Shown here: one piece after another, positions 1,871 through 58,340 of the stretch
Numbering within the stretch: the first letter of the stretch is position 1
Layout: every line of letters begins with the position of its first letter
NCBI RefSeq assembly: GCF_006345805.1
Contig: NC_043020.1
Coordinates: 11,966,001 to 12,030,000 of the forward strand
Source of the DNA: Octopus sinensis
Lineage: Eukaryota
Direction: 5' to 3'
Length of the DNA stretch: 64,000 nt
Notes under the pieces: generated by a model
Databases searched by the model: none
What the model saw: the letters and a program-made list of their open reading frames with translations, nothing else
Told to the model about the DNA's origin: nothing
Translations under genes and position numbers: made by a program

Positions 1871-2021
1871 GCCACCGTTTACGGAATGAGGATAACAACG
1901 TAGCTTTCGCGCCCGTGTAACTGCCATCCATCGCGTGTGGTGGGTGGATCTTCAAGTTGCCGCACGCATTCTTAGTAGCTTCGAGTAGGTTCGAATTAGA
2001 GATTATTATCTGTGGCTAATG

Positions 2022-2162: not shown

Positions 2163-2290
2163 AAAGACAACAGCGGCGAGGACGACGACATATTCTTAAC
2201 TGAATATGGTAAGTCAGGAACATAAAACAATCTCACTCCTTTAACCTGAATCTTTTCAACTCAGTAAATCATATTATTAATCTCGTAATA

Positions 2291-2510: not shown

Positions 2511-2515
2511 TAATA

Positions 2516-2523
2516 TTACGTCA
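2516..2523 (+). promoter_or_regulatory. CRE-like element TTACGTCA upstream of PDE A1 (also 10891-10898 and 47084-47091)
   Basis: One mismatch to TGACGTCA; a comparable motif lies upstream of the B and C paralogs. Confidence 0.4.
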
Positions 2524-2772
2524 TAGTTAGGTTGATATCATAAGTGAGTGGAGTGTTTTAGTTGTAAAAGTGCTGTCTAATCTTTAAAAGAAATGTGTAA
2601 GAGAAAGAATGGGAGAGAGGAAGGAAGAGATTTAGTCAGAGAAGAGGGAGAGGGAGAGAGAGAAAGAGAGAAATGAAAATAAGGAAAATTAGGCCAAAAT
2701 GGAGAGATTGATAGATACATTGATAGATAGGCATGTATATGTACATATACATACATATACGTATGCATATAC

Positions 2773-2843
<71 letters not shown>

Positions 2844-2858
2844 TGTGAGTGTATGAAC

Positions 2859-2947
<89 letters not shown>

Positions 2948-3030
2948 AAGGAATACGCAAGTAAAAGAGACTTCGTTTCTTCGTGTCGATAGAATATAGT
3001 CAGCTGCTTCAATAATAGACTAAAGAAATA

Positions 3031-6000
3031 ATGTCTACAGGTCTGACAGAAGAAGACATAAGAGATTTCCTTCATGACAACCCAGAATTCGTTGATAAAT
3101 GGCTTTCAGAACACGGCATGGAAGAAATAGCACCCGATTTTTCGAAACATAAGATTTTATCAAAAGCTGCCCTAAAATTTTGGGGTAAACTGTCTCCCAA
3201 ACAAGATCCAACTCAATATCTTGAGAATTCGGTTGAGGAACCAGAGTTACCTGTTAGTAAGATGAATTTGTTCAGAGATACACTCAAAGTGGTTCAGTCA
3301 GACATTAATTCAACGAGAGTTACTAAAAGAATTCTTCAAAACGCCTGCATTTTGCTTCGTTGTCATGCAACGAGCCTTCTTTTGGTCCAAGGAGTTGGTA
3401 AAAATCGATTTCTTATTTCGGAAACCAGTAATATTTCAACTAGATCTCAACTTGGCGAAATAGATAATACAGAAGAAGACACGGTTCATCTACCATTTGG
3501 CAAAGGAATTGTTGGTTTCGTAGCGGAAAACGAATGTTTAGTAAATATAAAAGAAGCGTGGCGTGATTCACGCCTTACAGAAAATATGAGAGAGACTAAC
3601 TGTCAAATTAAATCGATTCTTTCGCTACCAATTTTCGATAAAAACGATCGTGTGATAGGAGTAGCTAAAGCATTGAATAAATTGGATGGAGATAATTTCG
3701 ATTCTAGTGATGAAAACTTATTCGAATGTTTTTCGAAAATTTGTGCTCTGAATCTCAACAATGATCAGTTCTTTAAGGCTGCCCAAGGAGAAAAAATACG
3801 GCATCAAATGTTATTGAAACTCGGTCGGTGTTTTTTGAAAACTGGGGAGGATTTCCAGAGACTTGTATCTGAAATTCTTCAATACGCCATCAAAATGCTG
3901 GACTGTGATAATATTAGCATCTATTTAAGTGATGATATAGACGATGCACGTCAACTGACCGAGTCAGCGAACGTTTTACAACTTTTGAAGGGAGACACTA
4001 AAGTAAAAAATGCACCTATAGACCCGATGTTCATATCATTTATTGAACGAAATATGAATAGTGCTAGCATGGTGAATGTAGTTAGCGTGACTAATTTACA
4101 TGATAGAACCAAATGGAAAACAAAAATCACAGTGGATGGCGATATACTAAATTGGATAATTTGCGTGACAATACACGGTGATCGCGATAGTGTAATTGGT
4201 TATATGATGTTTCTCAGGAAGACGATTAATACCTTTAGTGAAAATGACATTAATATGTTGGAGACATTTGCCATTTTCTGCGGACTGGCGATTTATAACG
4301 ACCATTTGTACAAAAGTTGCAATAAAATAACATCCAGCCAAGATTTCGCATACGAATTGCTTCAGTTTCACACGACTTGCGAAGAAGAAGAAGCTTATGA
4401 CATGCAACATCAAGACATTCGCACAACAAGTCACTATAAACTTTACTCTTACAATTTTATTAGTTATTTATACTCAGAAGACGAACAGGTTATATTGACT
4501 GCTCTTATCTTTATAGAAATGAACGCTCTAAATTCATTGAAAATATCCAAGTTTACTTTGTATAGATGGATACTAACTGTGAAAAAAAACTATCGTCCTC
4601 TTACCTACCATAATTGGCAGCATGCTGTCAATGTTACTCAAGCAATGTTTTGTATGTTGACCACCGGTAGATTACAAGTATATTTCAAAGAATTTGAACT
4701 AATATGTCTGCTAATAGCTTGCTTGTTTCATGACATTGATCACAGAGGAACCAATAATGCATTCCAAGTGAATACAGCATCGCCTCTTGCTACTCTCTAC
4801 AATACGTCTGTGTTGGAAAACCATCATATAAATCGAAGTATCATGATATTGCAAAATGAAGATACAAATATTTTAAAAAACGTTTCAGCTGAAAAATATA
4901 AGAAGGCTCTCAAATTTATCGAGAAAGCAATCCTCGCTACAGACCTTGTAGATTATTTTTTGAAAAGAAACACTTTTAGAAAACACATCGAAGACGGTAA
5001 CAAAACTTTTGAGTCTCGAGAAAGCGTTGAATTATTAACTAGTATGATAATGACTGCAGCTGATCTTACAGCTATTACCAAGCCATGGGATTTTCAAAAA
5101 TTCTCAGTCATGTTAATGGCTGAGGAATTCTTTACACAAGGAGACATGGAAAGAGATTATGATATTCCTCTGTTGCCGTTAATGGATCGCAATTGTATAC
5201 GCGAAATACCACAAATGCAAGTTGGTTTTATTGATTTTGTGAGTACACTGCTTTATAAAACTTTGTCAGAACTGCATGAAGAATTGGAGCCTTTATATCA
5301 TGGGATGCTCGACAACAGAGCTCACTGGGCTGGTATTGCAAATGGTGATGAAATATTTGATATTAAGAAAGAGTATGAATTAGCTTTAAAGACGTTTTAC
5401 TCAGGAGTACCGATATCGAGTACGACTACTCCGATGTTACAAGTAAATGTAGCCACACAGACAGTTCTGACATATTTAAATGTGGTGCTAGAGCAACAAA
5501 CCATCCAAACCATACTTTCTTATCCTATTGAAGAATTAGTCACTGTGGATGATCTAACAATACCTGTTTCACCGGAAACTGAGATGATTACTAGAGTAAC
5601 AAAGAATTGTCAAACCGATGAACGATCCCCAACTGTAAGCGAAGTATCTGTTCAGACTTATGTACCTGCTACACGTACTGGTGAAGCCTCACCCGATGAA
5701 CCACAACCACACGTGTTCAGACGACAACCGTCCACTTTAACAAAATCTGGGAACTACTCGGGATCAGAAACTATAGTTTCATCACGTTCCAAGTCGTCAT
5801 TATACAGGTCGCCTTATACAGCTAGACGATCAAGTTGTTTCGATGAGCTTCTTTACGAAAGACGCCGGGAATTAGAGCAGGAAAAAGGAAAATCATTTAG
5901 AAATGCACTCTGTTTAGAAAAACCTTTGTCTATAAAAAGATCATCGCGTGTTATTTTACCACCGAACCCAATACGACGGGAAAGCACACAAACACGTTCC

Positions 6001-6450
6001 AGTGATTATATATTCAACAGAAGTTCGTCTACCATACGGTTTTCGATTGGGGAAATTTCTCAAAGAGATGAAGTTTTGTTTGAAAACATTCCGAAGAAGT
6101 CTTCTTTGAAATCTGAAATATCGGTGAAATCTCCCATTAAGGAGAACGTTCTTGAGCCAGTCAAAAACGATAATGTTCGTAAGAAGAGTAAAGAGGTACA
6201 GATAACTACGCCAAAAAAGAACAGACTGTCTTGGACGGATGCATACGAGGGTAGTGATAGTACAAAAAGTAGAATACCTGTGGCTCGAAAGTCACTTTCT
6301 ATACCGAGAGATCGAAAGGACAGTGTGGTTAAAAGATCGAGTTCAATAATGAAAAAAGATACGACACAGAATATGGAGTTTCGAAAACGAAAATGTGTGA
6401 AAGCTGTTCCAAAGAATTCTCAAAGGCGTAAAAGATTGCTATTTGTGTGA
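3031..6450 (+). CDS. Intronless GAF-GAF-PDEase cyclic nucleotide phosphodiesterase, PDE5/6/11 family, type A copy 1 (1139 aa as assembled)
   Basis: GAF-A NKxxxxxFxxxDE motif (LNKLDGDNFDSSDE); catalytic YHNWQH, HDIDHRG, LENHH, ILATD, ADLTAITKPW and PQMQVGFIDF. One G is missing at ~6438 relative to A2/A3, turning AICVIC* (stop would be 6456-6458) into LFV*. AATAAA at ~6505. Confidence 0.95.
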   Translation: MSTGLTEEDIRDFLHDNPEFVDKWLSEHGMEEIAPDFSKHKILSKAALKFWGKLSPKQDPTQYLENSVEEPELPVSKMNLFRDTLKVVQSDINSTRVTKRILQNACILLRCHATSLLLVQGVGKNRFLISETSNISTRSQLGEIDNTEEDTVHLPFGKGIVGFVAENECLVNIKEAWRDSRLTENMRETNCQIKSILSLPIFDKNDRVIGVAKALNKLDGDNFDSSDENLFECFSKICALNLNNDQFFKAAQGEKIRHQMLLKLGRCFLKTGEDFQRLVSEILQYAIKMLDCDNISIYLSDDIDDARQLTESANVLQLLKGDTKVKNAPIDPMFISFIERNMNSASMVNVVSVTNLHDRTKWKTKITVDGDILNWIICVTIHGDRDSVIGYMMFLRKTINTFSENDINMLETFAIFCGLAIYNDHLYKSCNKITSSQDFAYELLQFHTTCEEEEAYDMQHQDIRTTSHYKLYSYNFISYLYSEDEQVILTALIFIEMNALNSLKISKFTLYRWILTVKKNYRPLTYHNWQHAVNVTQAMFCMLTTGRLQVYFKEFELICLLIACLFHDIDHRGTNNAFQVNTASPLATLYNTSVLENHHINRSIMILQNEDTNILKNVSAEKYKKALKFIEKAILATDLVDYFLKRNTFRKHIEDGNKTFESRESVELLTSMIMTAADLTAITKPWDFQKFSVMLMAEEFFTQGDMERDYDIPLLPLMDRNCIREIPQMQVGFIDFVSTLLYKTLSELHEELEPLYHGMLDNRAHWAGIANGDEIFDIKKEYELALKTFYSGVPISSTTTPMLQVNVATQTVLTYLNVVLEQQTIQTILSYPIEELVTVDDLTIPVSPETEMITRVTKNCQTDERSPTVSEVSVQTYVPATRTGEASPDEPQPHVFRRQPSTLTKSGNYSGSETIVSSRSKSSLYRSPYTARRSSCFDELLYERRRELEQEKGKSFRNALCLEKPLSIKRSSRVILPPNPIRRESTQTRSSDYIFNRSSSTIRFSIGEISQRDEVLFENIPKKSSLKSEISVKSPIKENVLEPVKNDNVRKKSKEVQITTPKKNRLSWTDAYEGSDSTKSRIPVARKSLSIPRDRKDSVVKRSSSIMKKDTTQNMEFRKRKCVKAVPKNSQRRKRLLFV

Positions 6451-7106: not shown

Positions 7107-7145
<39 letters not shown>

Positions 7146-11382: not shown

Positions 11383-14300
11383 ATGTCTACAGGTCTGACA
11401 GAAGAAGACATAAGAGATTTCCTTCATGACAACCCAGAATTCGTTGATAAATGGCTTTCAGAACACGGCATGGAAGAAATAGCACCCGATTTTTCGAAAC
11501 ATAAGATTTTATCAAAAGCTGCCCTAAAATTTTGGGGTAAACTGTCTCCCAAACAAGATCCAACTGAATATCTTGAGAATTTGGTTGAGGAACCAGAGTT
11601 ACCTGTTAGTAAGATGAATTTGTTCAGAGATACACTCAAAGTGGTTCAGTCAGACATTAATTCAACGAGAGTTACTAAAAAAATTCTTCAAAACGCCTGC
11701 ATTTTGCTTCGTTGTCATGCAACGAGCCTTCTTTTGGTCCAAGGAGTTGGTAAAAATCGATTTCTTATTTCGGAAACCAACAATATTTCAACTAGATCTC
11801 AACCTGGCGAAATAGATAATACAGAAGAAGACACGGTTCATCTACCATTTGGCGAAGGAATTGTTGGTTTCGTAGCGGAAAACGAATGTTTAGTAAATAT
11901 TAAAGAAGCGTGGCGTGATTCACGCCTTACGGAAAATATGAGAGAGACTAACTGTCAAATTAGATCGATTCTTTCGCTACCAATTTTCGATAAAAACGAT
12001 CGTGTGATAGGAGTAGCTAAAGCATTGAATAAATTGGATGGAGATAATTTCGATTCTAGTGATGAAAACTTATTCGAATGTTTTTCGAAAATTTGTGCTC
12101 TGAATCTCAACAATGATCAGTTCTTTAAAGCTGCCCAAGGAGAAACAATACGGCATCAAATGTTATTGAAACTCGGTCGGTGTTTTTTGAAAACGGGGGA
12201 GGATTTCCAGAGACTTGTATCTGAAATTCTTCAATACGCCATCAAAATGCTGGACTGTGATAATATCAGCATCTATTTAAGTGATGATATAGACGATGCA
12301 CGTCAACTGACCGAGTCAGCGAACGTTTTACAACTTTTGAAGGGAGACACTAAAGTAAAAAATGCTCCTATAGACCCAATGTTCATATCATTTATTGAAC
12401 GAAATATGAATAGTGCTAGCATGGTGAATGTAGTTAGCGTGACTAATTTACATGATAGAACAAAATGGAAAACCAAAATCACATTGGATGGCGATATACT
12501 AAATTGGATAATTTGCGTGACAATACACGGTGATCGCGATAGTGTAATTGGTTATATGATGTTTCTCAGGAAGACGATTAATACCTTTAGTGAAAATGAC
12601 ATTAATATGTTGGAGACATTTGCCATTTTCTGCGGACTGGCGATTTATAACGACCATTTGTACAAAAGTTGCAATAAAATAACATCCAGCCAAGATTTCG
12701 CATACGAATTGCTTCAGTTTCACACGACTTGCGAAGAAGAAGAAGCTTATGACATGCAACATCAAGACATTCGCACAACAAGTCACTATAAACTTTACTC
12801 TTACAATTTTATTAGTTATTTATACTCAGAAGACGAACAGGTTATATTGACTGCTCTTATCTTTATAGAAATGAACGCTCTAAATTCATTGAAAATATCC
12901 AAGTTTACTTTGTATAGATGGATACTAACTGTGAAAAAAAACTATCGTCCTCTTACCTACCATAATTGGCAGCATGCTGTCAATGTTACTCAAGCAATGT
13001 TTTGTATGTTGACCACCGGTAGATTACAAGTATATTTCAAAGAATTTGAACTAATATGTCTGCTAATAGCTTGCTTGTTTCATGACATTGATCACAGAGG
13101 AACCAATAATGCATTCCAAGTGAATACAGCATCGCCTCTTGCTACTCTCTACAATACGTCTGTGTTGGAAAACCATCATATAAATCGAAGTATCATGATA
13201 TTGCAAAATGAAGATACAAATATTTTAAAAAACGTTTCAGCTGAAAAATATAAGAAGGCTCTCAAATTTATCGAGAAAGCAATCCTCGCTACAGACCTTG
13301 TAGATTATTTTTTGAAAAGAAACACTTTTAGAAAACACATCGAAGACGGTAACAAAACTTTTGAGTCTCGAGAAAGCGTTGAATTATTAACTAGTATGAT
13401 AATGACTGCAGCTGATCTTACAGCTATTACCAAGCCATGGGATTTTCAAAAATTCTCAGTCATGTTAATGGCTGAGGAATTCTTTACACAAGGAGACATG
13501 GAAAGAGCTTATGATATTCCTCTGTTGCCGTTAATGGATCGCAATTGTATACGCGAAATACCACAAATGCAAGTTGGTTTTATTGATTTTGTGAGTACAC
13601 TGCTTTATAAAACTTTGTCAGAACTGCATGAAGAATTGGAGCCTTTATATCATGGGATGCTCGACAACAGAGCTCACTGGGCTGGTATTGCAAATGGTGA
13701 TGAAATATTTGATATTAAGAAAGAGTATGAATTAGCTTTAAAGACGTTTTACTCAGGAGTACCGATATCGAGTACGACTACTCCGATGTTACAAGTAAAT
13801 GTAGCCACACAGACAGTTCTGACATATTTAAATGTGGTGCTAGAGCAACAAACCATCCAAACCATACTTTCTTATCCTATTGAAGAATTAGTCACTGTGG
13901 ATGATCTAACAATACCTGTTTCACCGGAAACTGAGATGATTACTAGAGTAACAAAGAATTGTCAAACCGATGAACGATCCCCAACTGTAAGCGAAGTATC
14001 TGTTCAGACTTATGTACCTGCTACACGTACTGGTGAAGCCTCACCCGATGAACCACAACCACACGTGTTCAGACGACAACCGTCCACTTTAACAAAATCT
14101 GGGAACTACTCGGGATCAGAAACTATAGTTTCATCACGTTCCAAGTCGTCATTATACAGGTCGCCTTATACAGCTAGACGATCAAGTTGTTTCGATGAGC
14201 TTCTTTACGAAAGACGCCGGGAATTAGAGCAGGAAAAAGGAAAATCATTTAGAAATGCACTCTGTTTAGAAAAACCTTTGTCTATAAAAAGATCATCGCG

Positions 14301-14811
14301 TGTTATTTTACCACCGAACCCAGTACGACGGGAAAGCACACAAACACGTTCCAGTGATTATATATTCAACAGAAGTTCGTCTACCATACGGTTTTCGATT
14401 GGGGAAATTTCTCAAAGAGATGAAGTTTTGTTTGAAAACATTCCGAAGAAGTCTTCTTTGAAATCTGAAATATCGGTGAAATCTCCCATTAAGGAGAACG
14501 TTCTTGAGCCAGTCAAAAACGATAATGTTCGTAAGAAGAGTAAAGAGGTACAGATAACTACGCCAAAAAAGAACAGACTGTCTTGGACGGATGCATACGA
14601 GGGTAGTGATAGTACAAAAAGTAGAATACCTGTGGCTCGAAAGTCACTTTCTATACCGAGAGATCGAAAGGACAGTGTGTTTAAAAGATCGAGTTCAATA
14701 ATGAAAAAAGATACGACACAGAATATGGAGTTTCGAAAACGAAAATGTGTGAAAGCTGTTCCAAAGAATTCTCAAAGGCGTAAAAGATTGGTTATTTGTG
14801 TGGTTTGTTAG
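11383..14811 (+). CDS. Intronless PDE5/6/11-family phosphodiesterase, type A copy 2 (1142 aa, ends CVVC*)
   Basis: Uninterrupted ORF with the same GAF and catalytic motifs as A1. About a dozen amino-acid differences from A1/A3, mostly in the first 370 aa. Confidence 0.96.
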   Translation: MSTGLTEEDIRDFLHDNPEFVDKWLSEHGMEEIAPDFSKHKILSKAALKFWGKLSPKQDPTEYLENLVEEPELPVSKMNLFRDTLKVVQSDINSTRVTKKILQNACILLRCHATSLLLVQGVGKNRFLISETNNISTRSQPGEIDNTEEDTVHLPFGEGIVGFVAENECLVNIKEAWRDSRLTENMRETNCQIRSILSLPIFDKNDRVIGVAKALNKLDGDNFDSSDENLFECFSKICALNLNNDQFFKAAQGETIRHQMLLKLGRCFLKTGEDFQRLVSEILQYAIKMLDCDNISIYLSDDIDDARQLTESANVLQLLKGDTKVKNAPIDPMFISFIERNMNSASMVNVVSVTNLHDRTKWKTKITLDGDILNWIICVTIHGDRDSVIGYMMFLRKTINTFSENDINMLETFAIFCGLAIYNDHLYKSCNKITSSQDFAYELLQFHTTCEEEEAYDMQHQDIRTTSHYKLYSYNFISYLYSEDEQVILTALIFIEMNALNSLKISKFTLYRWILTVKKNYRPLTYHNWQHAVNVTQAMFCMLTTGRLQVYFKEFELICLLIACLFHDIDHRGTNNAFQVNTASPLATLYNTSVLENHHINRSIMILQNEDTNILKNVSAEKYKKALKFIEKAILATDLVDYFLKRNTFRKHIEDGNKTFESRESVELLTSMIMTAADLTAITKPWDFQKFSVMLMAEEFFTQGDMERAYDIPLLPLMDRNCIREIPQMQVGFIDFVSTLLYKTLSELHEELEPLYHGMLDNRAHWAGIANGDEIFDIKKEYELALKTFYSGVPISSTTTPMLQVNVATQTVLTYLNVVLEQQTIQTILSYPIEELVTVDDLTIPVSPETEMITRVTKNCQTDERSPTVSEVSVQTYVPATRTGEASPDEPQPHVFRRQPSTLTKSGNYSGSETIVSSRSKSSLYRSPYTARRSSCFDELLYERRRELEQEKGKSFRNALCLEKPLSIKRSSRVILPPNPVRRESTQTRSSDYIFNRSSSTIRFSIGEISQRDEVLFENIPKKSSLKSEISVKSPIKENVLEPVKNDNVRKKSKEVQITTPKKNRLSWTDAYEGSDSTKSRIPVARKSLSIPRDRKDSVFKRSSSIMKKDTTQNMEFRKRKCVKAVPKNSQRRKRLVICVVC

Positions 14812-21168: not shown

Positions 21169-24100
21169 ATGATGGATGATTTACAGCAAGATGAGGTTGA
21201 AAATTTCTTACAGAATAATCCAGATTTCGTTCGCAAATGGCAATCTCGGCATTTTACAGTGGACGTCAAAAGGCAAAGCCTTAAATGCACGTTGAAAGTA
21301 CCGGGAGAGACCGGTTATAGTGCAACTACAAGTGATACAGTATTACAGGAGGTGAAATCAAAATCAAGAGGGTATAGTTCAGTAGTGACAGAGAATGAAA
21401 TATACAGAGAGTTTGTAAAAGACACTGTTTTCGAAGTCAATGTCGACAAACAGTGTCATAAAATTCTTCAAAATGCTTGTATCATCCTCGATTGTGAGAG
21501 AGCGAGCCTATTTCTGTTACATGGAACTGCTAAAAAGCTACACTTAGTTTCCAAGCTCTTTGACGTTACAGCCACCTCGGTTATGGAGGATACAATTCAC
21601 AACGAAGAAAATGCCATTCGCATTCCTTTCGGAAAGGAATTGTCGGATATGTAGCTGAATACAGTTGTCTATTGAACATTAAAGATGCCTACGAAGACGA
21701 ACGTTTTTTACATGAGATTGATAAATCAACGGGGTTCTGTACGAAAAGTATTCTATCTGTACCAATTAAGGATAGAGATGACGTCGTAATAGGTGTAGCT
21801 CAAGCATTGAATAAGAAACATGATCGTTATTTCGATTCGAATGATGAAATTATATTTCAGAACTTTTTGTCGTTTTGCGGAATCAGTATAATCAACGAAC
21901 GGTTGTTAGAAATATCACAAGTGGAATTTAAACGCCACAAGTTATTGCTAAAACTTGTCAAATTTGTTCTGAAAGAGCAAATCAATTTTCGAAAGCTTAT
22001 ATCAGAAATTCTTCGACATGCCATGGATATGTTAGACTGTAGCAAGATTTCTGTTTGTTTGACAGAAAACAGAATGGATGCGGCCTCTCCGACGATATCG
22101 TCTAACGTTTTCCAGTTATTAAAAGATGAAGAAGAAGTGGAGGAAGTTCCGTTAGATCCGAAATATATAATACCAATTGGCCGAAATTTAAAAAGTATCA
22201 ATATAATCGATATAATTCGATTACAAGGTGAATCAAAAGAGAGGTTAATCACTGTTGAAGGTGATGTCGGCCGTTGGCTACTGTGTATGACAATAACAAA
22301 TGCTACAAGTGAGGTCGTCGGTTGCATAATATTTGAAAGACATTCCAAAGATGTTTTCGACCAAAGTGACATCAACCTAATGGAGACGTTTGCATTGATT
22401 TGTGGAATCAGTATTCATAATTGTCGCATATATGAACGTTCTGTTAGGATGTTGGCACAGGGAGAAGTAATGAACGATGTGCTGGCATTTCATACCACAT
22501 GCGACCGGAAACTTATCGAACCTTTCTTAAAAGTCGAGCCACGATCCGCTGAAGAGTATCAATTATATTCCTATGCCTTTATTGAATCTGTATTTACAGA
22601 TGATGAAATTGTTTCGTTGTGTGCTCGTGTGTTTCTTGATAAAAATGCTTTGACCATATTAAATTTACCGATTGATATTTTATACAGGTTTATTTTAACA
22701 GCAAAGAAGAATTATCGCCCAAATATTTTCCATAACTGGCGCCACGGTGTACTGGTATTTCAAATGATGTTTTATTTTTTGACCTGTTCACGAATACAAT
22801 ATTATTTCACAGAATTTGAACAGATTTGTTCCCTTATTGCTTCTTTATTGCATGATCTTGACCACAGAGGGACAAATAATAAATTTCAAGTGAAGATATC
22901 ATCTCCGCTCACTACATTATACGATACGTCCGTCTTGGAACACCATCATATAGATAGAGCTATCAGGATGTTAAACACCGCCGAAACCAATATATTCCAG
23001 AATCTCTCGGCTGAAAATTATCAGCACGGTCTTAAATTTATCGAGAAAGCGATTCTTGCCACAGATGTAAAAGATCTTAATGAAGTAATTAAAAGTTTTA
23101 GAGAGGAAATCAAAAAGGGCGACAAAGGTTTTCAGTGTCAAAAAAGCATTGATTTATTAATAACCGTTATAATGGCAGCCTGTGATCTTTCAGCTACTAC
23201 AAAGCCATGGTCGTTTGAAAGAAATGCTGCAGTTAAGATTGCAGCTGAATTTTTCGAGCAGGGGGATCAAGAAAAAACTTTACAGAAAGATGTCGAAGAT
23301 CTCATGGATCGTGAAAATAGATACAAATTTCCTGAAATGGAAGTGAAGTATTTTGATACTCAATGTGTTCCGATTTTTCAAGTTTTATCTGAAATGGATG
23401 CTAATCTGACTCATCTGTATGAAGGGGCATTGGAGAATCGAAATCACTGGGCCCATATAGCTGAAGGCATCGAGTTTTTTGACATTGATTCCGAAATTGA
23501 GACTCTTTATAATGAAGAAATGAGTTTGAAAGGAGCAAAATATCACAAAATTGTAACACCTAAAATATCACGGATTCACTCTGAAAATGTTGCGTTAGGA
23601 ATGGCAACATCGTCTACTCAGACTACTTTTGTTCTCGCTGAAGAAAGTCAACGACTACGTCAAAAGACATCTCAAACGGATGATGATTTGTCTACAATGT
23701 CTTACTCCGAATCTCGTGCTTTAACGAACGCCATAAAAAGTTTTTATGCGGAAAAACTTCTCGCAGTAACGGTAAGGCCAATCGGTAAAAGAATCCGAAA
23801 AATTAATATAGGGACGCAAGTGAAATTTTCAAATGGTGATAGTGAGTTCTGTAGCCAACCTGGATTTCTTAGTAGAGCCATGTCCCTTGAACCACCCAAA
23901 ACATTTTCAGACTCATGGTTAAAAACAAATAAATTCCCTACAAGTATGAATCTCGATGGAGCAGAACAAGAAGCGATGGGTTGTTCGTCAGACATAGGTA
24001 GCTGGACAGCTGCTTGTGTAACATTTGAAACGCCTGAACAAAAGATGAGAGCTTTGAGACCTGTGATCTCTAAACAGACGCTAGACATGGAAAGATTTAC

Positions 24101-24272
24101 AATGAGTGCAGAAGAAAGAGAAAAAATTTCTAATGTTGCAGTGAAAGACCTCAATCAAGGTCGAAGAAGAAAATGTTTAAAGAAAATTCCACGGAGTAAA
24201 CCAGTTCTTACAAGCAAGAGAACCAAAAGGCAGGACGATTTTATGGAAAAGTATGTGTGTAAGATTTCATAA
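21169..24272 (+). CDS. Intronless PDE5/6/11-family phosphodiesterase, type B1 (1034 aa after repairing a 1-nt deletion at 21631-21632; ends CKIS*)
   Basis: ORFs 21169-21654 and 21672-24272 join if GG is read as GGG, as in B2 (TTCGGGAAAGGA). Motifs LNKKHDRYFDSNDE, FHNWRH, HDLDHRG and CDLSATTKPW are present; the Gln-switch position is Glu. It could be a real pseudogene rather than a sequencing error. Confidence 0.85.
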
Positions 24273-27727: not shown

Positions 27728-27895
27728 TTTCGAAGACAAACCACGAAAGCATGTCTGCTGCCTGCTTCTAATTTCAAGTAGCGAAGACTACTGATTTAAA
27801 ATAAAATCAAGAAATACAGAAATTTTCATGAAACGTTTTCTAGAATACTTAGAAGCATCATTGAACCTTGTTTGGAAATTAAACTTAAAAGAAAC

Positions 27896-30800
27896 ATGGC
27901 AACAAAATTTACTGAGAAAGCAGGACTTACTGAAGAAGATGTGGATGATTTCTTGTCGAAGAATCCAGTATTCGTTAGATCATGGCTCTCTAGGCGAGGA
28001 CTGGGTGACTTGGGGGAAGAATTATACAATCAAAAATTAAAGGAAGAAGCAGTAGATTCCTTTATAGACTTCTTACAAAACATAGTGTTTCATAAGAAAC
28101 TTTCCCGAAGAAACCAAGCCGAATCTCTTACTACAAATGAAAAGTACAAAGAAATATTGAAAGTTCTTAATTCCGAGATTCATATACACTTTGTCTGTCA
28201 TAAAGTTCTTCAGAATTTATGTATCTTACTTCACAGTGAAAGAGCAAATCTTTTTATGGTTCGAGGAGTTGGAAAAGTTCAATATCTAATGTCGACCCTG
28301 TTTGATATTACATCTGACTCTACTCTTGAACAATCACTTCATACTGAAGAAAACGCACTACGCATTCCCTTCGGAAAAGGTATTGCAGGATTTGTAGCTG
28401 ATAATAAGTATCTCTTAAATATTAAGGATGTGTATCAGGATCCTCGTTTCTTAAGTGAAGTCGACGAAAAAATTGGACATCGTACCAAAAGCATTCTATG
28501 CATGCCAATTCTAGACACTGATGATAGTTTGTTAGCTGTCGCTCAAATAATAAATAAAAGAGATAATCTCTATTTTGATGCTGAAGACCAAATGATCTGC
28601 GAGAGTTTTTTGTCCTTTTGTGCCATTAGTATAAGAAGCAATAATTTCTTGCGAAGATCATTTGAGGAATTCACACAACACAAGTTATTACTAAGACTGA
28701 ATCGATGTATACTAAAATATCAAAATTCTCTGCCGAAACTAATGTCCGAAATTACCAAACTCGCCATGGAAATGTTACAGTGTGAGAGTATCAGCATTTA
28801 TTTGATTGATCCGAAAAAGGATAACCTTTGCCCAACTGATTCTTCCAAAGTTTTTCACTTATTGAAAGGAGCTTCAGATATCTCAGAACAAATTATAACA
28901 CCTAAAGTAAAGAAAGCAATTGAACAAAATATTAACAGCGGAAATACTTTCGATTTGTTTCTTTCGGGGGACCTTACTGAGCCTGACAACGTAAAGGTCG
29001 ATTATAAGATTGACAGTCAGTTGCTTTGTTTAGCTATTAGAGATGCCGGTAAGAATTTTGTTGGTTGGATCGTATACATCAAAGATTCAAAGGATATTTT
29101 TAGTCAAAATGATATCAGCATGATGGAAATATTTGCAATGTTCTGCGGTTTAGCCATCTATAATTGCCGTCTTTATGAAACTGCATCAAATATGCTGGAA
29201 CAGCTAGAATTTACAAACGAAGTACTTAGCTACTTTATTACTTGTGATCCAGAAATTGTAGATAATTTTTTAAGTATGGAGGTACTATCTTCAGGTTTTT
29301 ACCAAATTTATCGATTCGATTTCAATGACTTCATATATTCAGAGGATGACACTGTTTTGTTGGTCGTTCGCATATTTTTAGATGCCAAAACATTGCCCGT
29401 TCTCAACATATCTAAAGAATTATTATATAGGTGGATACTAACTGTTAAAAAGAACTATCGACCTGTCATCTATCATAATTGGCGTCATGCTATCAATGTT
29501 ACTCAAATGATGTTTTGTATGTTGACTACTGGCAAATTGCAAAATTATTTCACAGAATTTGAGCAGATTTGCCTATTGGTGGCTGCTTTGTGTCATGATC
29601 TTGATCATAGAGGATATAATAATGCATTTCAAGTGAAGACGGCATCTCCTCTTGCTACTCTTTACAGTACCTCTGTGTTGGAAAATCATCATATAGATCG
29701 AAGTATCAGGATATTAAAAACTGAAGATACAAATATTTTTAAAAACGTTCCAGCTGAAAAATATCAGAAGGGTCTCAAATTAATCGAGAAAGCAATCATT
29801 GCTACGGATCTCGTAGTATATTTTGAGAAAAAAAATATTTTCAAACGCAAAATAGAAGTCGAAGACCAAACGTTGTCATCTCAAGAAACCATTGATTTAC
29901 TTATTAGCATGATGATGACTGCGTGTGACCTTTCAGCTATTACTAAGCCATGGGAGGTTCAAAGAAAGACTGCTATTATGGTCGCAGCCGAATTCTTCGA
30001 ACAAGGTGACATAGAAACCAAATGTAAATATTTTGTGTTGCCTATGATGGATCGCAGTAAAAGATACGAATTGCCCAAAATGCAAGTTGGTTTTATTGAT
30101 TTTGTGTGTACATTACTTTACAAACTTCTTCATCAGGTGCATGAGGAATTAAAACCTCTTTACGATGGGATGCTCGAAAACAGAGCTCATTGGTCTCATA
30201 TTGCAAATGGTGAGGAAGAATTTGATGTTGATAGAGAGTTCGAATTAGTTTTACATAACATTTCGCTGGATAGTGCTATGACAGTCGGAGATATAGGAGA
30301 CACGGGTGTTTCGACCCAAACTCTTTTCACATTTAATCAAGAGCAAAAGGTTACTCAGACTGATATTTCAATCCCAATAGATATATGTCAACAAAAAACT
30401 ACCAAACCATCTTTGAACAATGTTGAGACAAAAACAGCGGATAGTCAAACTGAACCTCGACTTCTGAAAGTGTCTTCGGCAATAACTCAAACAGAAAGGC
30501 CTTCTTTGAGAGAATCAGAGCACTTACCGATTACAATGCCACACGAACAACCAGTGATATCTTTAGAAACACTAGAAGAATCTAACATTGGACAAGATAA
30601 GTTATCTTTACGGAGAAAAGCTTACAGTAATCATGCACAACCAACTCAGCCTTTGCCTCCAATCAACCGGCAAAGACGAACTAGTTGGATCGATGAGTTG
30701 CTGAGAACAAACGTAGCGAATTATCACAAAGCCGACGAGGAAGTCAGGCTCTGAATGCCTTACCTGATGAACCACCCAACCATTCAAAAGAATAAGTCGT

Positions 30801-31303
30801 GTTTTTCAACCACCAGTACGGCAAAAACTATCATCTTCAGAACCCGAATATAACAAAAGCATCAAAAGCATGACATCAGACGAAACCATCTCGGAAATTA
30901 GTTCTCAATATACTGTAAGGGGAAGTTTTTCAAAAGCATCGTCTGACAGAAAAACACAGGGAAACACAGAATCTGACAGAAAAACACAGGAAAACACAGA
31001 ATCTGACAGAAAAACACAGAAAAACACAGAATCTGACAGAAAAACACAGGGAAACACAGAATCTTACAGAAAAACACAGGGAAACACAGAATCTTACAGA
31101 ATCCCAGAGAATCTCTCAGAAAAACCTAAGAGCACGGAAGGAAATGAAAACACTGAAGGTTTTAAACCGCAAGCAGACTTGAAGTTAAAAAATCCAAATT
31201 TGAACAACGATAATCGACAACGGAAATGCGCGAAAATCACTGCGAAACCAAACCTCCTCAAAGACTAACCGTTTTAAAAAGCAAAATGTGCATGATATTC
31301 TAG
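27896..31303 (+). CDS. Intronless PDE5/6/11-family phosphodiesterase, type C (952 aa as assembled to 30754; ~1136 aa ending CMIF* if three 1-nt deletions in the tail are repaired)
   Basis: First ATG at 27896. Motifs INKRDNLYFDAEDQ, YHNWRH, HDLDHRG, AIIATDL, MMMTACDLSAITKPWEVQ and LPKMQVGFIDFVCT are present. Downstream frames give KRSELSQ..LNAL, FKRISRVFQPP, RQRKCAK and KMCMIF*, which match the type A and B tails. Confidence 0.9.
30942..31100 (+). repeat. Coding 30-bp minisatellite (SDRKTQ[GEK]NTE, about five units) in the PDE C tail
   Basis: TCTGACAGAAAAACACAGGGAAACACAGAA tandem units in ORF 30870-31268. Confidence 0.9.
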
Positions 31304-47597: not shown

Positions 47598-50500
47598 ATG
47601 TCTACAGGTCTGACAGAAGAAGACATAAGAGATTTCCTTCATGACAACCCAGAATTCGTTGATAAATGGCTTTCAGAACACGGCATGGAAGAAATAGCAC
47701 CCGATTTTTCGAAACATAAGATTTTATCAAAAGCTGCCCTAAAATTTTGGGGTAAACTGTCTCCCAAACAAGATCCAACTCAATATCTTGAGAATTCGGT
47801 TGAGGAACCAGAGTTACCTGTTAGTAAGATGAATTTGTTCAGAGATACACTCAAAGTGGTTCAGTCAGACATTAATTCAACGAGAGTTACTAAAAGAATT
47901 CTTCAAAACGCCTGCATTTTGCTTCGTTGTCATGCAACGAGCCTTCTTTTGGTCCAAGGAGTTGGTAAAAATCGATTTCTTATTTCGGAAACCAGTAATA
48001 TTTCAACTAGATCTCAACTTGGCGAAATAGATAATACAGAAGAAGACACGGTTCATCTACCATTTGGCAAAGGAATTGTTGGTTTCGTAGCGGAAAACGA
48101 ATGTTTAGTAAATATAAAAGAAGCGTGGCGTGATTCACGCCTTACAGAAAATATGAGAGAGACTAACTGTCAAATTAAATCGATTCTTTCGCTACCAATT
48201 TTCGATAAAAACGATCGTGTGATAGGAGTAGCTAAAGCATTGAATAAATTGGATGGAGATAATTTCGATTCTAGTGATGAAAACTTATTCGAATGTTTTT
48301 CGAAAATTTGTGCTCTGAATCTCAACAATGATCAGTTCTTTAAGGCTGCCCAAGGAGAAAAAATACGGCATCAAATGTTATTGAAACTCGGTCGGTGTTT
48401 TTTGAAAACTGGGGAGGATTTCCAGAGACTTGTATCTGAAATTCTTCAATACGCCATCAAAATGCTGGACTGTGATAATATTAGCATCTATTTAAGTGAT
48501 GATATAGACGATGCACGTCAACTGACCGAGTCAGCGAACGTTTTACAACTTTTGAAGGGAGACACTAAAGTAAAAAATGCACCTATAGACCCGATGTTCA
48601 TATCATTTATTGAACGAAATATGAATAGTGCTAGCATGGTGAATGTAGTTAGCGTGACTAATTTACATGATAGAACCAAATGGAAAACAAAAATCACAGT
48701 GGATGGCGATATACTAAATTGGATAATTTGCGTGACAATACACGGTGATCGCGATAGTGTAATTGGTTATATGATGTTTCTCAGGAAGACGATTAATACC
48801 TTTAGTGAAAATGACATTAATATGTTGGAGACATTTGCCATTTTCTGCGGACTGGCGATTTATAACGACCATTTGTACAAAAGTTGCAATAAAATAACAT
48901 CCAGCCAAGATTTCGCATACGAATTGCTTCAGTTTCACACGACTTGCGAAGAAGAAGAAGCTTATGACATGCAACATCAAGACATTCGCACAACAAGTCA
49001 CTATAAACTTTACTCTTACAATTTTATTAGTTATTTATACTCAGAAGACGAACAGGTTATATTGACTGCTCTTATCTTTATAGAAATGAACGCTCTAAAT
49101 TCATTGAAAATATCCAAGTTTACTTTGTATAGATGGATACTAACTGTGAAAAAAAACTATCGTCCTCTTACCTACCATAATTGGCAGCATGCTGTCAATG
49201 TTACTCAAGCAATGTTTTGTATGTTGACCACCGGTAGATTACAAGTATATTTCAAAGAATTTGAACTAATATGTCTGCTAATAGCTTGCTTGTTTCATGA
49301 CATTGATCACAGAGGAACCAATAATGCATTCCAAGTGAATACAGCATCGCCTCTTGCTACTCTCTACAATACGTCTGTGTTGGAAAACCATCATATAAAT
49401 CGAAGTATCATGATATTGCAAAATGAAGATACAAATATTTTAAAAAACGTTTCAGCTGAAAAATATAAGAAGGCTCTCAAATTTATCGAGAAAGCAATCC
49501 TCGCTACAGACCTTGTAGATTATTTTTTGAAAAGAAACACTTTTAGAAAACACATCGAAGACGGTAACAAAACTTTTGAGTCTCGAGAAAGCGTTGAATT
49601 ATTAACTAGTATGATAATGACTGCAGCTGATCTTACAGCTATTACCAAGCCATGGGATTTTCAAAAATTCTCAGTCATGTTAATGGCTGAGGAATTCTTT
49701 ACACAAGGAGACATGGAAAGAGATTATGATATTCCTCTGTTGCCGTTAATGGATCGCAATTGTATACGCGAAATACCACAAATGCAAGTTGGTTTTATTG
49801 ATTTTGTGAGTACACTGCTTTATAAAACTTTGTCAGAACTGCATGAAGAATTGGAGCCTTTATATCATGGGATGCTCGACAACAGAGCTCACTGGGCTGG
49901 TATTGCAAATGGTGATGAAATATTTGATATTAAGAAAGAGTATGAATTAGCTTTAAAGACGTTTTACTCAGGAGTACCGATATCGAGTACGACTACTCCG
50001 ATGTTACAAGTAAATGTAGCCACACAGACAGTTCTGACATATTTAAATGTGGTGCTAGAGCAACAAACCATCCAAACCATACTTTCTTATCCTATTGAAG
50101 AATTAGTCACTGTGGATGATCTAACAATACCTGTTTCACCGGAAACTGAGATGATTACTAGAGTAACAAAGAATTGTCAAACCGATGAACGATCCCCAAC
50201 TGTAAGCGAAGTATCTGTTCAGACTTATGTACCTGCTACACGTACTGGTGAAGCCTCACCCGATGAACCACAACCACACGTGTTCAGACGACAACCGTCC
50301 ACTTTAACAAAATCTGGGAACTACTCGGGATCAGAAACTATAGTTTCATCACGTTCCAAGTCGTCATTATACAGGTCGCCTTATACAGCTAGACGATCAA
50401 GTTGTTTCGATGAGCTTCTTTACGAAAGACGCCGGGAATTAGAGCAGGAAAAAGGAAAATCATTTAGAAATGCACTCTGTTTAGAAAAACCTTTGTCTAT

Positions 50501-51005
50501 AAAAAGATCATCGCGTGTTATTTTACCACCGAACCCAATACGACGGGAAAGCACACAAACACGTTCCAGTGATTATATATTCAACAGAAGTTCGTCTACC
50601 ATACGGTTTTCGATTGGGGAAATTTCTCAAAGAGATGAAGTTTTGTTTGAAAACATTCCGAAGAAGTCTTCTTTGAAATCCGAAATATCGGTGAAATCTC
50701 CCATTAAGGAGAACGAAAATGTTCGTAAGAAGAGTAAAGAGGTACAGATAACTACGCCAAAAAAGAACAGACTGTCTTGGACGGATGCATACGAGGGTAG
50801 TGATAGTACAAAAAGTAGAATACCTGTGGCTCGAAAGTCACTTTCTATACCGAGAGATCGAAAGGACAGTGTGGTTAAAAGATCGAGTTCAATAATGAAA
50901 AAAGATACGACACAGAATATGGAGTTTCGAAAACGAAAATGTGTGAAAGCTGTTCCAAAGAATTCTCAAAGGCGTAAAAGATTGGCTATTTGTGTGATTT
51001 GTTAG
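47598..51005 (+). CDS. Intronless PDE5/6/11-family phosphodiesterase, type A copy 3 (1135 aa, ends CVIC*)
   Basis: Uninterrupted ORF, essentially identical to A1 apart from a 21-nt in-frame deletion in the tail (ENVLEPVKNDNV to ENENV) and the intact C-terminus. Confidence 0.96.
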   Translation: MSTGLTEEDIRDFLHDNPEFVDKWLSEHGMEEIAPDFSKHKILSKAALKFWGKLSPKQDPTQYLENSVEEPELPVSKMNLFRDTLKVVQSDINSTRVTKRILQNACILLRCHATSLLLVQGVGKNRFLISETSNISTRSQLGEIDNTEEDTVHLPFGKGIVGFVAENECLVNIKEAWRDSRLTENMRETNCQIKSILSLPIFDKNDRVIGVAKALNKLDGDNFDSSDENLFECFSKICALNLNNDQFFKAAQGEKIRHQMLLKLGRCFLKTGEDFQRLVSEILQYAIKMLDCDNISIYLSDDIDDARQLTESANVLQLLKGDTKVKNAPIDPMFISFIERNMNSASMVNVVSVTNLHDRTKWKTKITVDGDILNWIICVTIHGDRDSVIGYMMFLRKTINTFSENDINMLETFAIFCGLAIYNDHLYKSCNKITSSQDFAYELLQFHTTCEEEEAYDMQHQDIRTTSHYKLYSYNFISYLYSEDEQVILTALIFIEMNALNSLKISKFTLYRWILTVKKNYRPLTYHNWQHAVNVTQAMFCMLTTGRLQVYFKEFELICLLIACLFHDIDHRGTNNAFQVNTASPLATLYNTSVLENHHINRSIMILQNEDTNILKNVSAEKYKKALKFIEKAILATDLVDYFLKRNTFRKHIEDGNKTFESRESVELLTSMIMTAADLTAITKPWDFQKFSVMLMAEEFFTQGDMERDYDIPLLPLMDRNCIREIPQMQVGFIDFVSTLLYKTLSELHEELEPLYHGMLDNRAHWAGIANGDEIFDIKKEYELALKTFYSGVPISSTTTPMLQVNVATQTVLTYLNVVLEQQTIQTILSYPIEELVTVDDLTIPVSPETEMITRVTKNCQTDERSPTVSEVSVQTYVPATRTGEASPDEPQPHVFRRQPSTLTKSGNYSGSETIVSSRSKSSLYRSPYTARRSSCFDELLYERRRELEQEKGKSFRNALCLEKPLSIKRSSRVILPPNPIRRESTQTRSSDYIFNRSSSTIRFSIGEISQRDEVLFENIPKKSSLKSEISVKSPIKENENVRKKSKEVQITTPKKNRLSWTDAYEGSDSTKSRIPVARKSLSIPRDRKDSVVKRSSSIMKKDTTQNMEFRKRKCVKAVPKNSQRRKRLAICVIC

Positions 51006-58100: not shown

Positions 58101-58340
58101 ACAAAGTGAATCTAGAGAAACTTTAATCACTGTTGAAGGTGAGGTTGGCAGTTGGCTACTGTGTATGACAATAACAAATGCTACAAGTGAGGTCGTCGGT
58201 TGCATAATATTTGTGAGACATTCCAAAGATGTTTTCGACCAAAGTGACATCAACCTAATGGAGACGTTTGCATTGATTTGTGGAATCAGTATTCATAATT
58301 GTCGCATATATGAACGTTCTGTTAGGATGTTGGCACAGCG
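54205..58340 (+). repeat. Duplicated block (B upstream region + B GAF half), homologous to ~18305-22460
   Basis: Same SINE, MITE, CRE and 5' coding sequence in the same order; high identity ends at ...TTGGCACAG. Confidence 0.9.

What the first reader, a model, noticed from the sequence alone, without database searches (positions are those of the whole stretch)
5440..6000. Multivalent TQT (LC8/DYNLL-type) motifs in the tails of all paralog types
Seen: A has VATQTV, QTIQT, KNCQTD, VSVQTY and ESTQTR. C has VSTQTL, KVTQTD, ADSQTE and AITQTE (30300-30500). B1 has SSTQTT, KTSQTD and IGTQV (23600-23825). B2 has ICTQTN, ESSQTA, KGIQTI and RSQTA (59470-59730). The surrounding tails are otherwise barely alignable. 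Established: TQT and GIQ-type motifs in disordered regions bind the LC8 hub, and tandem copies form multivalent scaffolds. I know of no such tail in vertebrate PDE5/6/11. Inference: LC8-mediated dimer stiffening or dynein/axoneme tethering.
Basis: partly seen in the sequence, partly recalled or inferred. Interest (0 to 1): 0.7.

Follow-up and report, generated by a model that had tools for sequence, protein, structure and literature searches.

The report
Octopus phosphodiesterase tails with LC8-type motifs
A tandem family of intronless octopus cGMP-phosphodiesterase genes carries two to five conserved "QT" motifs in a fast-evolving, disordered tail; these match the kind that binds the dimeric hub protein LC8, which would probably zip the enzyme dimer's two tails into a stalk above its lipid anchor, but binding itself is untested.

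Summary
The window is octopus DNA (98% identical to an O. vulgaris protein). It holds six intronless GAF-GAF-PDE genes of the PDE5/6 type (A1, A2, A3, B1, B2, C).

- **Enrichment.** QT is the most over-represented of all 400 dipeptides in the tails: 18 seen against 4.6 expected, Bonferroni P 7e-4. It is almost absent from the folded parts.
- **Conservation.** The QT cores sit at homologous positions (M1-M4, plus a B-specific GIQT/GTQV). They are kept in O. bimaculoides and Argonauta where tail identity falls to 16-38%.
- **Sequence detail.** Synonymous codons vary, and position -1 is only T, I, S, C or V. Flanks lean towards LC8 preferences (K at -3, D/E at +2).
- **Disorder.** AlphaFold2 pLDDT is below 50 over the motifs.
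- **Clade limit.** All 21 non-octopod relatives with long tails have none.

Best reading (confidence about 0.55): LC8 dimers bridge the two parallel tails of the PDE dimer and stiffen the spacer between the catalytic head and the polybasic-CaaX membrane anchor.

Weak points: single motifs score mid-range or low on a binder matrix, CQT anchors have no precedent, and three listed motifs (RSQTA, KQT, RQT) look like chance. Binding was not tested.

The parts
3031..6450 (+). Gene A1: intronless GAF-GAF-PDEase gene, 1139 aa; tail begins near aa 778. A 1-bp deletion near 6437 replaces the CaaX end with RLLFV*.
   Evidence: ORF; Pfam GAF and PDEase_I; 3' ends of the A copies compared
5443..5466 (+). 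A1 motif M1, VNVATQTV (position shared by all paralog types)
5491..5514 (+). A1 motif M2, EQQTIQTI (QT kept in all 7 tails aligned; weak LC8 flanks in the A lineage)
5596..5619 (+). A1 motif M3, VTKNCQTD (A and C lineages; best flanks; unusual C at -1)
5638..5661 (+). A1 motif M4, SEVSVQTY (A and C lineages)
5974..5997 (+). A1 motif M5, RRESTQTR (kept in O. bimaculoides A only; poor flanks)
11383..14811 (+). Gene A2 (1142 aa, ends CVVC). Motifs M1-M5 at 13795-13818, 13843-13866, 13948-13971, 13990-14013, 14326-14349.
47598..51005 (+). Gene A3 (1135 aa, ends CVIC). Motifs M1-M5 at 50010-50033, 50058-50081, 50163-50186, 50205-50228, 50541-50564.
21169..24272 (+). Gene B1 (ends CKIS). A 1-bp deletion near 21640 splits the ORF in this window; the gene is intact in the O. 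vulgaris reference.
23604..23627 (+). B1 motif M1, ATSSTQTT
23658..23681 (+). B1 motif M2, RQKTSQTD
23802..23825 (+). B1 B-specific motif, INIGTQVK (homologous to B2 KSKGIQTI)
57047..60375 (+). Gene B2 (ends CTIS). A 1-bp deletion near 57645 splits the ORF in this window.
59467..59490 (+). B2 motif M1, TSICTQTN
59527..59550 (+). B2 motif M2, REESSQTA (REESCQTD in O. bimaculoides)
59683..59706 (+). B2 B-specific motif, KSKGIQTI (classic GIQ type; kept in O. bimaculoides)
59707..59730 (+).
27872..31303 (+). Gene C. The ORF stops at 30754 in this window. Three frame changes (about 30697, 30771, 31253) are needed to follow the 1136-aa O. vulgaris protein that ends CMIF.
30302..30325 (+). C motif M1, TGVSTQTL
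30341..30364 (+). C motif M2, EQKVTQTD
30431..30454 (+). C motif M3, KTADSQTE
30473..30496 (+). C motif M4, SSAITQTE (highest matrix score, 14.1)
50928..51005 (+). A3 polybasic stretch plus CaaX box (RKRKCVKAVPKNSQRRKRLAICVIC*), the presumed prenyl membrane anchor at the far end of the tail. Equivalents: A2 14734-14811, B1 24162-24272, B2 60265-60375.
   Evidence: many relatives also end in CaaX

Best explanation
The tails of these octopod PDE5/6-type enzymes are multivalent clients of the LC8 (DYNLL) hub.

**Proposed architecture.** Each chain carries two closely spaced pairs of QT-anchored octamers. M1-M2 and M3-M4 are separated by linkers of 5-12 residues, and the two pairs lie 21-27 residues apart. 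The B lineage has M1-M2 plus a GIQT/GTQV site instead. All sites sit in a disordered segment that starts about 30 residues after the catalytic domain.

**Proposed mechanism.** GAF-PDEs are parallel homodimers, so the two tails leave the catalytic heads side by side. Each LC8 dimer would take one motif from each tail as a beta-strand. Several LC8 dimers would then form an in-register ladder. The ladder would reinforce the dimer and turn the proximal tail into a stiff stalk between the catalytic head and the polybasic, prenylated C-terminus at the membrane.

**Status of each step.**
- Shown here: the motifs, their enrichment, conservation, flank bias, disorder and clade restriction.
- Inferred: LC8 binding, ladder formation, the dimer geometry of this particular enzyme, and prenylation.
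For: 1. QT is the top over-represented dipeptide of 400 in the tails (18 vs 4.59, Bonferroni 7e-4). Shuffle tests agree.
2. There are four homologous QT columns across A, B1, B2 and C. They are kept in O. bimaculoides A, B1, B2, C and D and in two Argonauta genes. Retention in register: A vs Argonauta A 4/6 at 24% tail identity (P 1.4e-4); A vs C 4/6 at 16% (P 8e-6); C vs Argonauta C 3/4 at 38% (P 0.01).
3. Q and T codons differ between copies (CAA/CAG; ACA/ACC/ACT/ACG), so the constraint acts on the protein.
4. In 33 conserved instances, position -1 is only T, I, S, C or V, position 0 is always Q, and +1 is T (32) or V (1). K is commonest at -3, S/T at -4, S/G at -2, and D/E at +2 (15 of 33). 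This matches the published preferences (PMC6607443).
5. Flank scores on a matrix built from published binders beat 3053 random octamers of the same tails (0.53 vs -2.83, P 3e-10). The non-conserved QTs score at background.
6. The motifs lie where AlphaFold2 pLDDT is 24-32, next to a catalytic domain at 80-97. The tails have no Pfam or PDB match.
7. The closest solved relatives are PDE5 and PDE6 (E 2e-111 and 1e-99), which are parallel dimers by established knowledge.
8. Linkers of 5-12 residues fall around the 6-9 residue range reported to give homogeneous LC8 duplexes (PMC10046861).
9. Individually weak motifs can bind cooperatively and turn a disordered linker into a rod (KANK1, PMC12803091).
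10. All 21 non-octopod relatives with tails of 60 aa or more have no such motif, so the feature is a gained one and not family background.
Against: - No binding data exist.
- On my matrix only five motifs reach the lower-middle range of known binders (11.4-14.1, against a binder leave-one-out median of 13.8). Most score 7-10, inside the range of TQT-containing non-binders (median 10.1).
- The matrix separates binders from non-binders poorly. It is not LC8Pred itself.
- C at -1 (M3 of the A lineage, 6 instances) occurs in none of the 70 binders used.
- M2 of the A lineage has Q at -4 and -3 and a hydrophobic +2 residue (flank score -6.0).
- M1 is followed in every paralog by a hydrophobic run (VLTYL, LFTF, TFVL, NLIF) that LC8 motifs do not need. 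This hints at another or an additional role.
- The statistical tests on motif instances are not phylogenetically independent.
- Expression, dimer state and prenylation of these proteins are unknown.
- Several copies in this window carry frameshifts.
Confidence: 0.55

Rival explanations
1. The QT cores are a real, selected short linear motif, but for a partner or modification other than LC8. Examples would be another beta-strand-capturing domain, or a kinase or other enzyme acting on the threonine.
For: Conservation and enrichment show constraint but do not name the partner. Many motifs score like TQT-containing non-binders. CQT anchors have no precedent among binders. The hydrophobic run after M1 is not an LC8 feature.
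Against: Q-T with T/I/V/S at -1, K at -3 and D/E at +2, repeated in disordered sequence, is the LC8 signature, including two GIQT and one GTQV instance. The SQ/TQ kinase-cluster reading fails: TQ and [ST]Q are not enriched, and position -1 is often I, V or C. I know of no other reader of this motif.
Confidence: 0.2
2. LC8 does bind, but its role is to attach the enzyme to dynein or to axonemal complexes. An example would be tethering in the sperm flagellum.
For: LC8 is a component of dynein and of radial spokes, where it binds RSP3 multivalently (PMC3392930). [quoted passage not shown] Intronless, tandemly amplified genes are often testis-expressed (general knowledge).
Against: LC8 binds symmetrically and does not bridge different clients (PMC12057147). 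Sites occupied by the PDE tails are therefore not free for dynein. The CaaX end points to a membrane location, not an axonemal one.
Confidence: 0.1
3. The proximal motifs, above all M1 and M2 of A with their hydrophobic flanks, are parts of a small folded or self-associating element. It would pack on the catalytic domain or pair the two tails directly, without a partner protein.
For: VATQTVLTYLNVVLEQQTIQTILSYPIEELVTVDDLTIPV is unusually hydrophobic for a disordered tail and is well kept in Argonauta. AlphaFold2 draws a helix over aa 807-821.
Against: That helix has pLDDT 27-29 and makes no confident contact. The hydrophobic context is absent around M2-M4 of C and around the B motifs, where only QT and its LC8-like flanks persist.
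Confidence: 0.08
4. The QT excess is an accident of composition and shared descent and has no function.
For: The paralogs share ancestry, so motif counts are not independent. Three QTs (B1 KQT, B2 RSQT, B2 RQT) are indeed not conserved.
Against: QT ranks first among 400 dipeptides after correction. It is retained at 16-24% tail identity, with varying codons and a varying -1 residue. Flanks are biased in the LC8 direction only at the conserved sites.
Confidence: 0.05

Closest known systems
Multivalent LC8 clients that form duplex ladders or rods: ASCIZ/ATMIN, Nup159, RSP3, Chica/FAM83D, KANK1 L2
   Same: Several QT-anchored octamers in a disordered region, a mix of stronger and weaker sites, and linkers of a few to about 30 residues (PMC6607443, PMC10046861, PMC12803091). 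The client is expected to be a parallel dimer.
   Different: The client here is an enzyme whose dimer is already made by GAF domains. It has only 3-5 sites and includes CQT anchors not seen in the binder set. The ladder would lie between a catalytic head and a lipid anchor. No binding data exist.
Vertebrate PDE5 and PDE6, and prenylated invertebrate PDE5/6-like enzymes
   Same: GAF-A, GAF-B and PDEase_I architecture. Best PDB matches are PDE5 (E 2e-111) and PDE6 (E 1e-99). The CaaX end resembles PDE6 and many invertebrate relatives.
   Different: A 260-360 residue disordered tail sits between the catalytic domain and the CaaX box. QT motifs are absent from all 21 non-octopod relatives examined. 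The genes are intronless and tandemly amplified.
Long-tailed relatives without QT motifs (P0008, P0014, P0024; organisms not named by the sources)
   Same: Same domains. Long tail with the RR[ST]S..DE helix island, V[IV].PP island and polybasic region; CaaX ends in P0008 (CAIA) and P0024 (CSII), but not P0014, which ends YITK.
   Different: They have no [TSVIC]QT sites. P0014 and P0024 carry E/K-rich inserts instead. This suggests the QT sites were gained inside an older tail in the octopod lineage.

Membership tests
LC8 (DYNLL) binding motif / LC8 client | Anchor triplet: Q at position 0, with a mid-sized polar or hydrophobic residue (T, V, I, S) at -1 and T or V at +1 | tested here: met
   33 conserved instances: Q 33/33; +1 is T 32 and V 1; -1 is T 10, I 7, S 6, C 6, V 4. 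C at -1 is not among the 70 binders used.
LC8 (DYNLL) binding motif / LC8 client | Flank preferences: large or basic residue at -3, polar (D/S/T) at -4, no bulky aromatic at -2, D/E/P at +2 | tested here: inconclusive
   K is commonest at -3, S/T at -4, S/G at -2, D/E at +2 in 15 of 33. Flank scores beat random tail octamers (P 3e-10). However, the mean (0.53) is near published non-binders (-0.16) and far below binders (4.48, self-scored). Whole-motif scores run from 3.2 to 14.1 against a binder median of 13.8.
LC8 (DYNLL) binding motif / LC8 client | Motif lies in an intrinsically disordered, accessible region | tested here: met
   AlphaFold2 pLDDT is 24-32 over the motif regions of A and C, against 80-97 in the catalytic domain. 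No domain matches were found. pLDDT is only a proxy for disorder.
LC8 (DYNLL) binding motif / LC8 client | Motif conserved more than its surroundings | tested here: met
   QT is kept in register at 16-38% tail identity, with varying codons.
LC8 (DYNLL) binding motif / LC8 client | Published predictor thresholds (LC8Pred amino-acid score at least 12.9 and volume/polarity score at least 0.1) | not tested
   LC8Pred matrices are not available here. My matrix, built from Table S4 with viral entries left out, is only an approximation.
LC8 (DYNLL) binding motif / LC8 client | Direct binding to the LC8 groove, lost on mutating the anchor | not testable with these tools
   This needs ITC, pull-down or NMR.
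Multivalent LC8 duplex scaffold | Three or more sites per chain, with linkers that allow stacked LC8 dimers, on chains that run in parallel | tested here: inconclusive
   There are 3-5 sites per chain. Linkers are 5-12 residues within pairs and 21-27 between pairs, which is compatible with PMC10046861. A parallel dimer is inferred only from homology to PDE5/PDE6/PDE2.
PDE5/6/11-type GAF phosphodiesterase | Two GAF domains followed by a class I PDE catalytic domain with the metal-binding H..H, HD..DH residues | tested here: met
   Pfam GAF and PDEase_I hits, E 1e-68 to 1e-83. HNW.H and HD.DHRG are invariant in the alignment. Best PDB hits are PDE5 and PDE6.
Prenylated (PDE6-like) phosphodiesterase | C-terminal CaaX box | tested here: met
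   A2 ends CVVC, A3 CVIC, B1 CKIS, B2 CTIS, each preceded by a polybasic stretch. The box is lost in A1 by a 1-bp deletion and out of frame in C in this window. Prenylation itself was not tested.

The most novel reading that the evidence does not exclude
Within an older disordered, prenyl-anchored tail, octopods evolved a set of weak LC8 sites from scratch. LC8 occupancy would then act as a switch that changes a membrane-anchored cGMP phosphodiesterase from a floppy tether into a stiff stalk of fixed length. This would set how far the catalytic head sits from the membrane and so shape cGMP nanodomains, perhaps in sperm. It would be the first case of LC8 acting as a ruler for a cyclic-nucleotide enzyme.
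Probability: 0.2. Interest if true: 0.7.

Novelty: new member of a known kind. Interest (0 to 1): 0.5.

Why it matters
Where a phosphodiesterase sits decides which pool of cGMP it controls. Known targeting devices for this family are N-terminal regions, prenyl groups and, for PDE6, its gamma and delta partners.

A multivalent LC8 ladder on a PDE tail would be a new device of this kind. My literature search found no link between PDEs and LC8.

The case also offers a clean example of short-motif gain. Four sites arose in one clade, inside an older tail, and were then held while everything around them changed.

It is cheap to test: a 100-residue tail fragment, LC8, and QT-to-AA mutants.

Tried and rejected
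**Searches and look-ups that gave nothing useful**
- A tail-only homology search returned nothing, not even the protein itself.
- A search with the Argonauta protein added no new octopod sequence.
- An exact look-up of the window's A3 protein found no record. The organisms behind P0008, P0009, P0014 and P0024 could not be named.
- A literature search for expression data gave only one unmapped testis-biased 'Pde' gene.

- No LC8-peptide complex could be modelled, because the tool takes single chains from the window or from search hits. I did not try to get round this.

**Readings considered and dropped**
- An SQ/TQ kinase-target cluster: TQ and [ST]Q are not enriched, and position -1 is often I, V or C.
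- Nucleotide-level constraint such as RNA-editing structure: the codons vary.
- A look-elsewhere artefact: QT ranks first among 400 dipeptides.
- A hidden domain in the tail: no Pfam or PDB match.

**Limits of the matrix**
- My binder matrix separates binders from TQT-containing non-binders only weakly, so single-motif calls are not reliable.
- Viral entries of the published table were left out of the matrix.
Full report
**What the window is.** The window holds six large single-exon ORFs on the + strand: A1 3031-6450, A2 11383-14811, A3 47598-51005, B1 about 21169-24272, C 27872-30754 and B2 about 57047-60375. All have GAF domains followed by a class I phosphodiesterase domain. The nearest database protein is an Octopus vulgaris 'cGMP-specific' PDE at 98% identity. 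Orthologs occur in O. bimaculoides, and a relative in Argonauta hians. The best solved relatives are PDE5 (E 2e-111) and PDE6, and homology stops at about residue 776. What follows is a tail of 260-360 residues with no Pfam or PDB match. The tail ends in a polybasic stretch and a CaaX box: CVVC, CVIC, CKIS, CTIS.

**The observation.** In A, all six QT dipeptides lie in the tail and none in the first 800 residues. Against 20,000 shuffles of each tail, QT counts are 6 vs 1.35 (A), 5 vs 0.91 (B2), 4 vs 1.43 (C) and 3 vs 0.93 (B1). [TSVIC]QT is 8-13 fold over expectation, while TQ-not-followed-by-T is at expectation. To guard against a pattern chosen after looking, I scanned all 400 dipeptides. 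QT ranks first (18 vs 4.59, P 1.7e-6, Bonferroni 7e-4), and no other dipeptide survives correction in the four window tails.

**Homologous positions.** A local alignment of the proximal tails puts the QTs in four shared columns.
- M1 is in A, B1, B2 and C.
- M2 is in every sequence aligned.
- M3 and M4 are in the A and C lineages.
- B1 INIGTQVK and B2 KSKGIQTI share a fifth, B-specific position.

Spacing is kept. Linkers between octamers are 5-12 residues for M1-M2, 5-6 for M3-M4, and 21-27 between the pairs.

**Conservation in other species.**
- O. bimaculoides keeps the sites in A, B1, B2 and C, and has a fifth paralog D with KEKSCQTD.
- The O. vulgaris reference keeps D's CQTD but not its IQT.
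- Argonauta A has KNKGIQTE, EQQTSQTI and VTKECQTS.
- An uncalled second Argonauta gene 5.5 kb upstream is C-type, with GDENVQTN, NTVSCQTE and QSIGIQTY.

QT is retained in register far more often than overall tail identity predicts: A vs Argonauta A 4/6 at 24% identity (P 1.4e-4), A vs C 4/6 at 16% (P 8e-6), and C vs Argonauta C 3/4 at 38% (P 0.01). Codons for Q and T differ among copies, so the constraint acts on the protein and not the DNA or RNA. Three QTs are not conserved: B1 KQT, B2 RSQT and B2 RQT. They have K, S or R at -1 and background-level flanks. They serve as internal negative controls.

**Clade restriction.** A full HMMER search of 1.84 billion representatives found 4986 relatives at E below 1e-30. 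Among the best 150 plus earlier hits, 29 had a tail of at least 60 residues by my rule. All 8 octopod members have 2-5 [TSVIC]QT sites, and all 21 others have none. Long-tailed relatives without QT sites (P0008, P0014, P0024) share other tail islands: RR[ST]S..DE followed by a helix, V[IV].PP and a polybasic region, with CaaX ends in P0008 and P0024. The tail is therefore older than the QT sites, which look like an octopod gain.

**Are they LC8 motifs?** Published rules ask for five things: Q at 0, a mid-sized polar or hydrophobic residue at -1 and +1, a large or basic residue at -3, a polar residue at -4, and D/E/P at +2. The motif must also lie in disordered sequence (PMC6607443; PMC3078936).

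I built a log-odds matrix from that paper's Table S4, using 70 binders and 30 non-binders with viral entries left out. Whole-motif scores are mixed:
- SSAITQTE 14.1, TSICTQTN 13.3, ATSSTQTT 12.7, KSKGIQTI 12.3 and VNVATQTV 11.4 fall in the lower-middle range of binders (median 13.8, lower quartile 11.2).
- The rest score 3-10, within the range of TQT-containing non-binders (median 10.1).

The matrix is a weak discriminator and is not LC8Pred.

A more telling test uses only the flanks, which played no part in choosing the sites. The 33 conserved instances score 0.53 on average against -2.83 for 3053 random octamers of the same tails (P 3e-10, instances not independent). Six of seven motif groups lie above the 70th percentile of the null, and the non-conserved QTs sit at background. 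Residue tallies point the same way: K leads at -3, S/T at -4, S/G at -2, D/E at +2 (15 of 33), and position -1 is only T, I, S, C or V.

**Disorder.** AlphaFold2 models of catalytic domain plus tail give pLDDT 80-97 for the catalytic domain. From about residue 795 (A) and 799 (C) onward the value is 24-35. The one exception is a weak helix over RRSSCFDELLYERRRELEQE.

**Mechanism.** By established knowledge, GAF-PDEs (PDE2, PDE5, PDE6; all hits) are parallel dimers, so the two tails leave side by side. That is the geometry LC8 needs. Each LC8 dimer takes the same motif from two chains, in register, and does not bridge different clients (PMC12057147). Linkers of 6-9 residues favour homogeneous stacks (PMC10046861). 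Arrays of individually weak sites can bind cooperatively and turn a disordered linker into a rod (KANK1, PMC12803091).

I therefore favour an LC8 ladder that reinforces the dimer and stiffens the spacer between the catalytic head and the prenyl anchor. Tethering to dynein or the axoneme is less likely for the reason above, although LC8-RSP3 in radial spokes shows that an axonemal setting is possible (PMC3392930). One paper lists a like-named PDE gene as testis-biased in O. sinensis (PMC11202624), but I could not map that gene to this locus.

**Reasons for caution.**
- Binding is untested.
- CQT anchors have no precedent in the binder set.
- M2 of the A lineage has poor flanks.
- M1 is always followed by a hydrophobic run that LC8 does not require.
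- The significance tests reuse related sequences.
- Expression, dimer state and prenylation are unknown.

No paper in the library links a PDE to LC8. If true, this is a new client of a known hub and not a new kind of system.

Noticed in passing
window about 6437 (A1), 21640 (B1), 57645 (B2), and 30697, 30771, 31253 (C): Single-base indels break the reading frames relative to sister copies or to the O. vulgaris reference proteins. A1 loses its CaaX box, B1 and B2 are split in GAF-A, and the distal tail of C needs three frame changes. The four inspected at base level (A1, B1, B2) lie in short homopolymer runs. B1 is intact in the reference assembly. Assembly error or real decay is not settled.
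   Followed up: partly
window 1-9663 vs 44556-54205; also 2294-7143 vs 10669-15503: A recent segmental duplication: a 9.7-kb block containing A1 is 99.3% identical to the block containing A3. The A2 block is about 98% identical to both.
   Followed up: partly
window 18289-23344 vs 54188-59222, and 23869-24676 vs 62510-63316: B1 and B2 are 92% identical from upstream through most of the catalytic domain, then differ completely through the proximal tail. A B1-like distal tail and 3' end reappears about 2 kb downstream of the B2 stop codon. B2 thus looks like a mosaic made by replacement or gene conversion. dS is 0.34 in the core and 1.5 in the tail.
   Followed up: partly
window 30942-31101: A 30-bp tandem repeat of 5.3 copies at 96% match lies in the distal C tail. 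In the frame of the reference protein it encodes DRKTQ(E/G/K)NTES decapeptides. TQ is followed by E, G or K, so these are not LC8-type anchors.
   Followed up: partly
window 5824-5889 (A1), 14176 onward (A2), 50391 onward (A3); also C near 30680: A conserved tail island, RR[ST]S[CW].DE, is followed by a short predicted helix. It is shared with non-octopod long-tailed relatives (P0008, P0014). It looks like a basophilic kinase (PKA/PKG-type) site next to an amphipathic helix. A second shared island is R[VI].xPP.
   Followed up: no
window 25979-27172 (-), 38618-39583 (+), 40199-41677 (+): Non-LTR retrotransposon remains lie between the PDE genes: one reverse-transcriptase ORF on the minus strand, and an endonuclease ORF followed by a reverse-transcriptase ORF on the plus strand.
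   Followed up: partly
window 4-579, 574-1299, 43838-45865: The overlapping ORFs of 190-250 aa listed here are artefacts of long tetranucleotide microsatellites (ATGT, AGAC, GATA, TATG). They have no Pfam match.
   Followed up: yes
window 34020-35706: Very AT-rich stretch (GC 0.235), made largely of (TA)n arrays of 260 and 150 copies.
   Followed up: no
window 42133-43833: Several arrays of a 33/39-bp tandem repeat (consensus GAGGCAAGTGTGTGACACTTGTGAAGACCTGTTGAGGCA) lie downstream of the retrotransposon ORFs. Their nature is unknown.
   Followed up: no
L005 1320-4523 and 10001-13018 (Argonauta hians); L007 3617-6778 (-), 10001-13408, 20066-23167 (O. vulgaris reference): The family is intronless and tandemly arranged in Argonauta as well (a C-type and an A-type gene 5.5 kb apart). 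In the O. vulgaris reference the order is D(-), A(+), B1(+). The single-exon founder therefore predates the Octopus-Argonauta split.
   Followed up: partly
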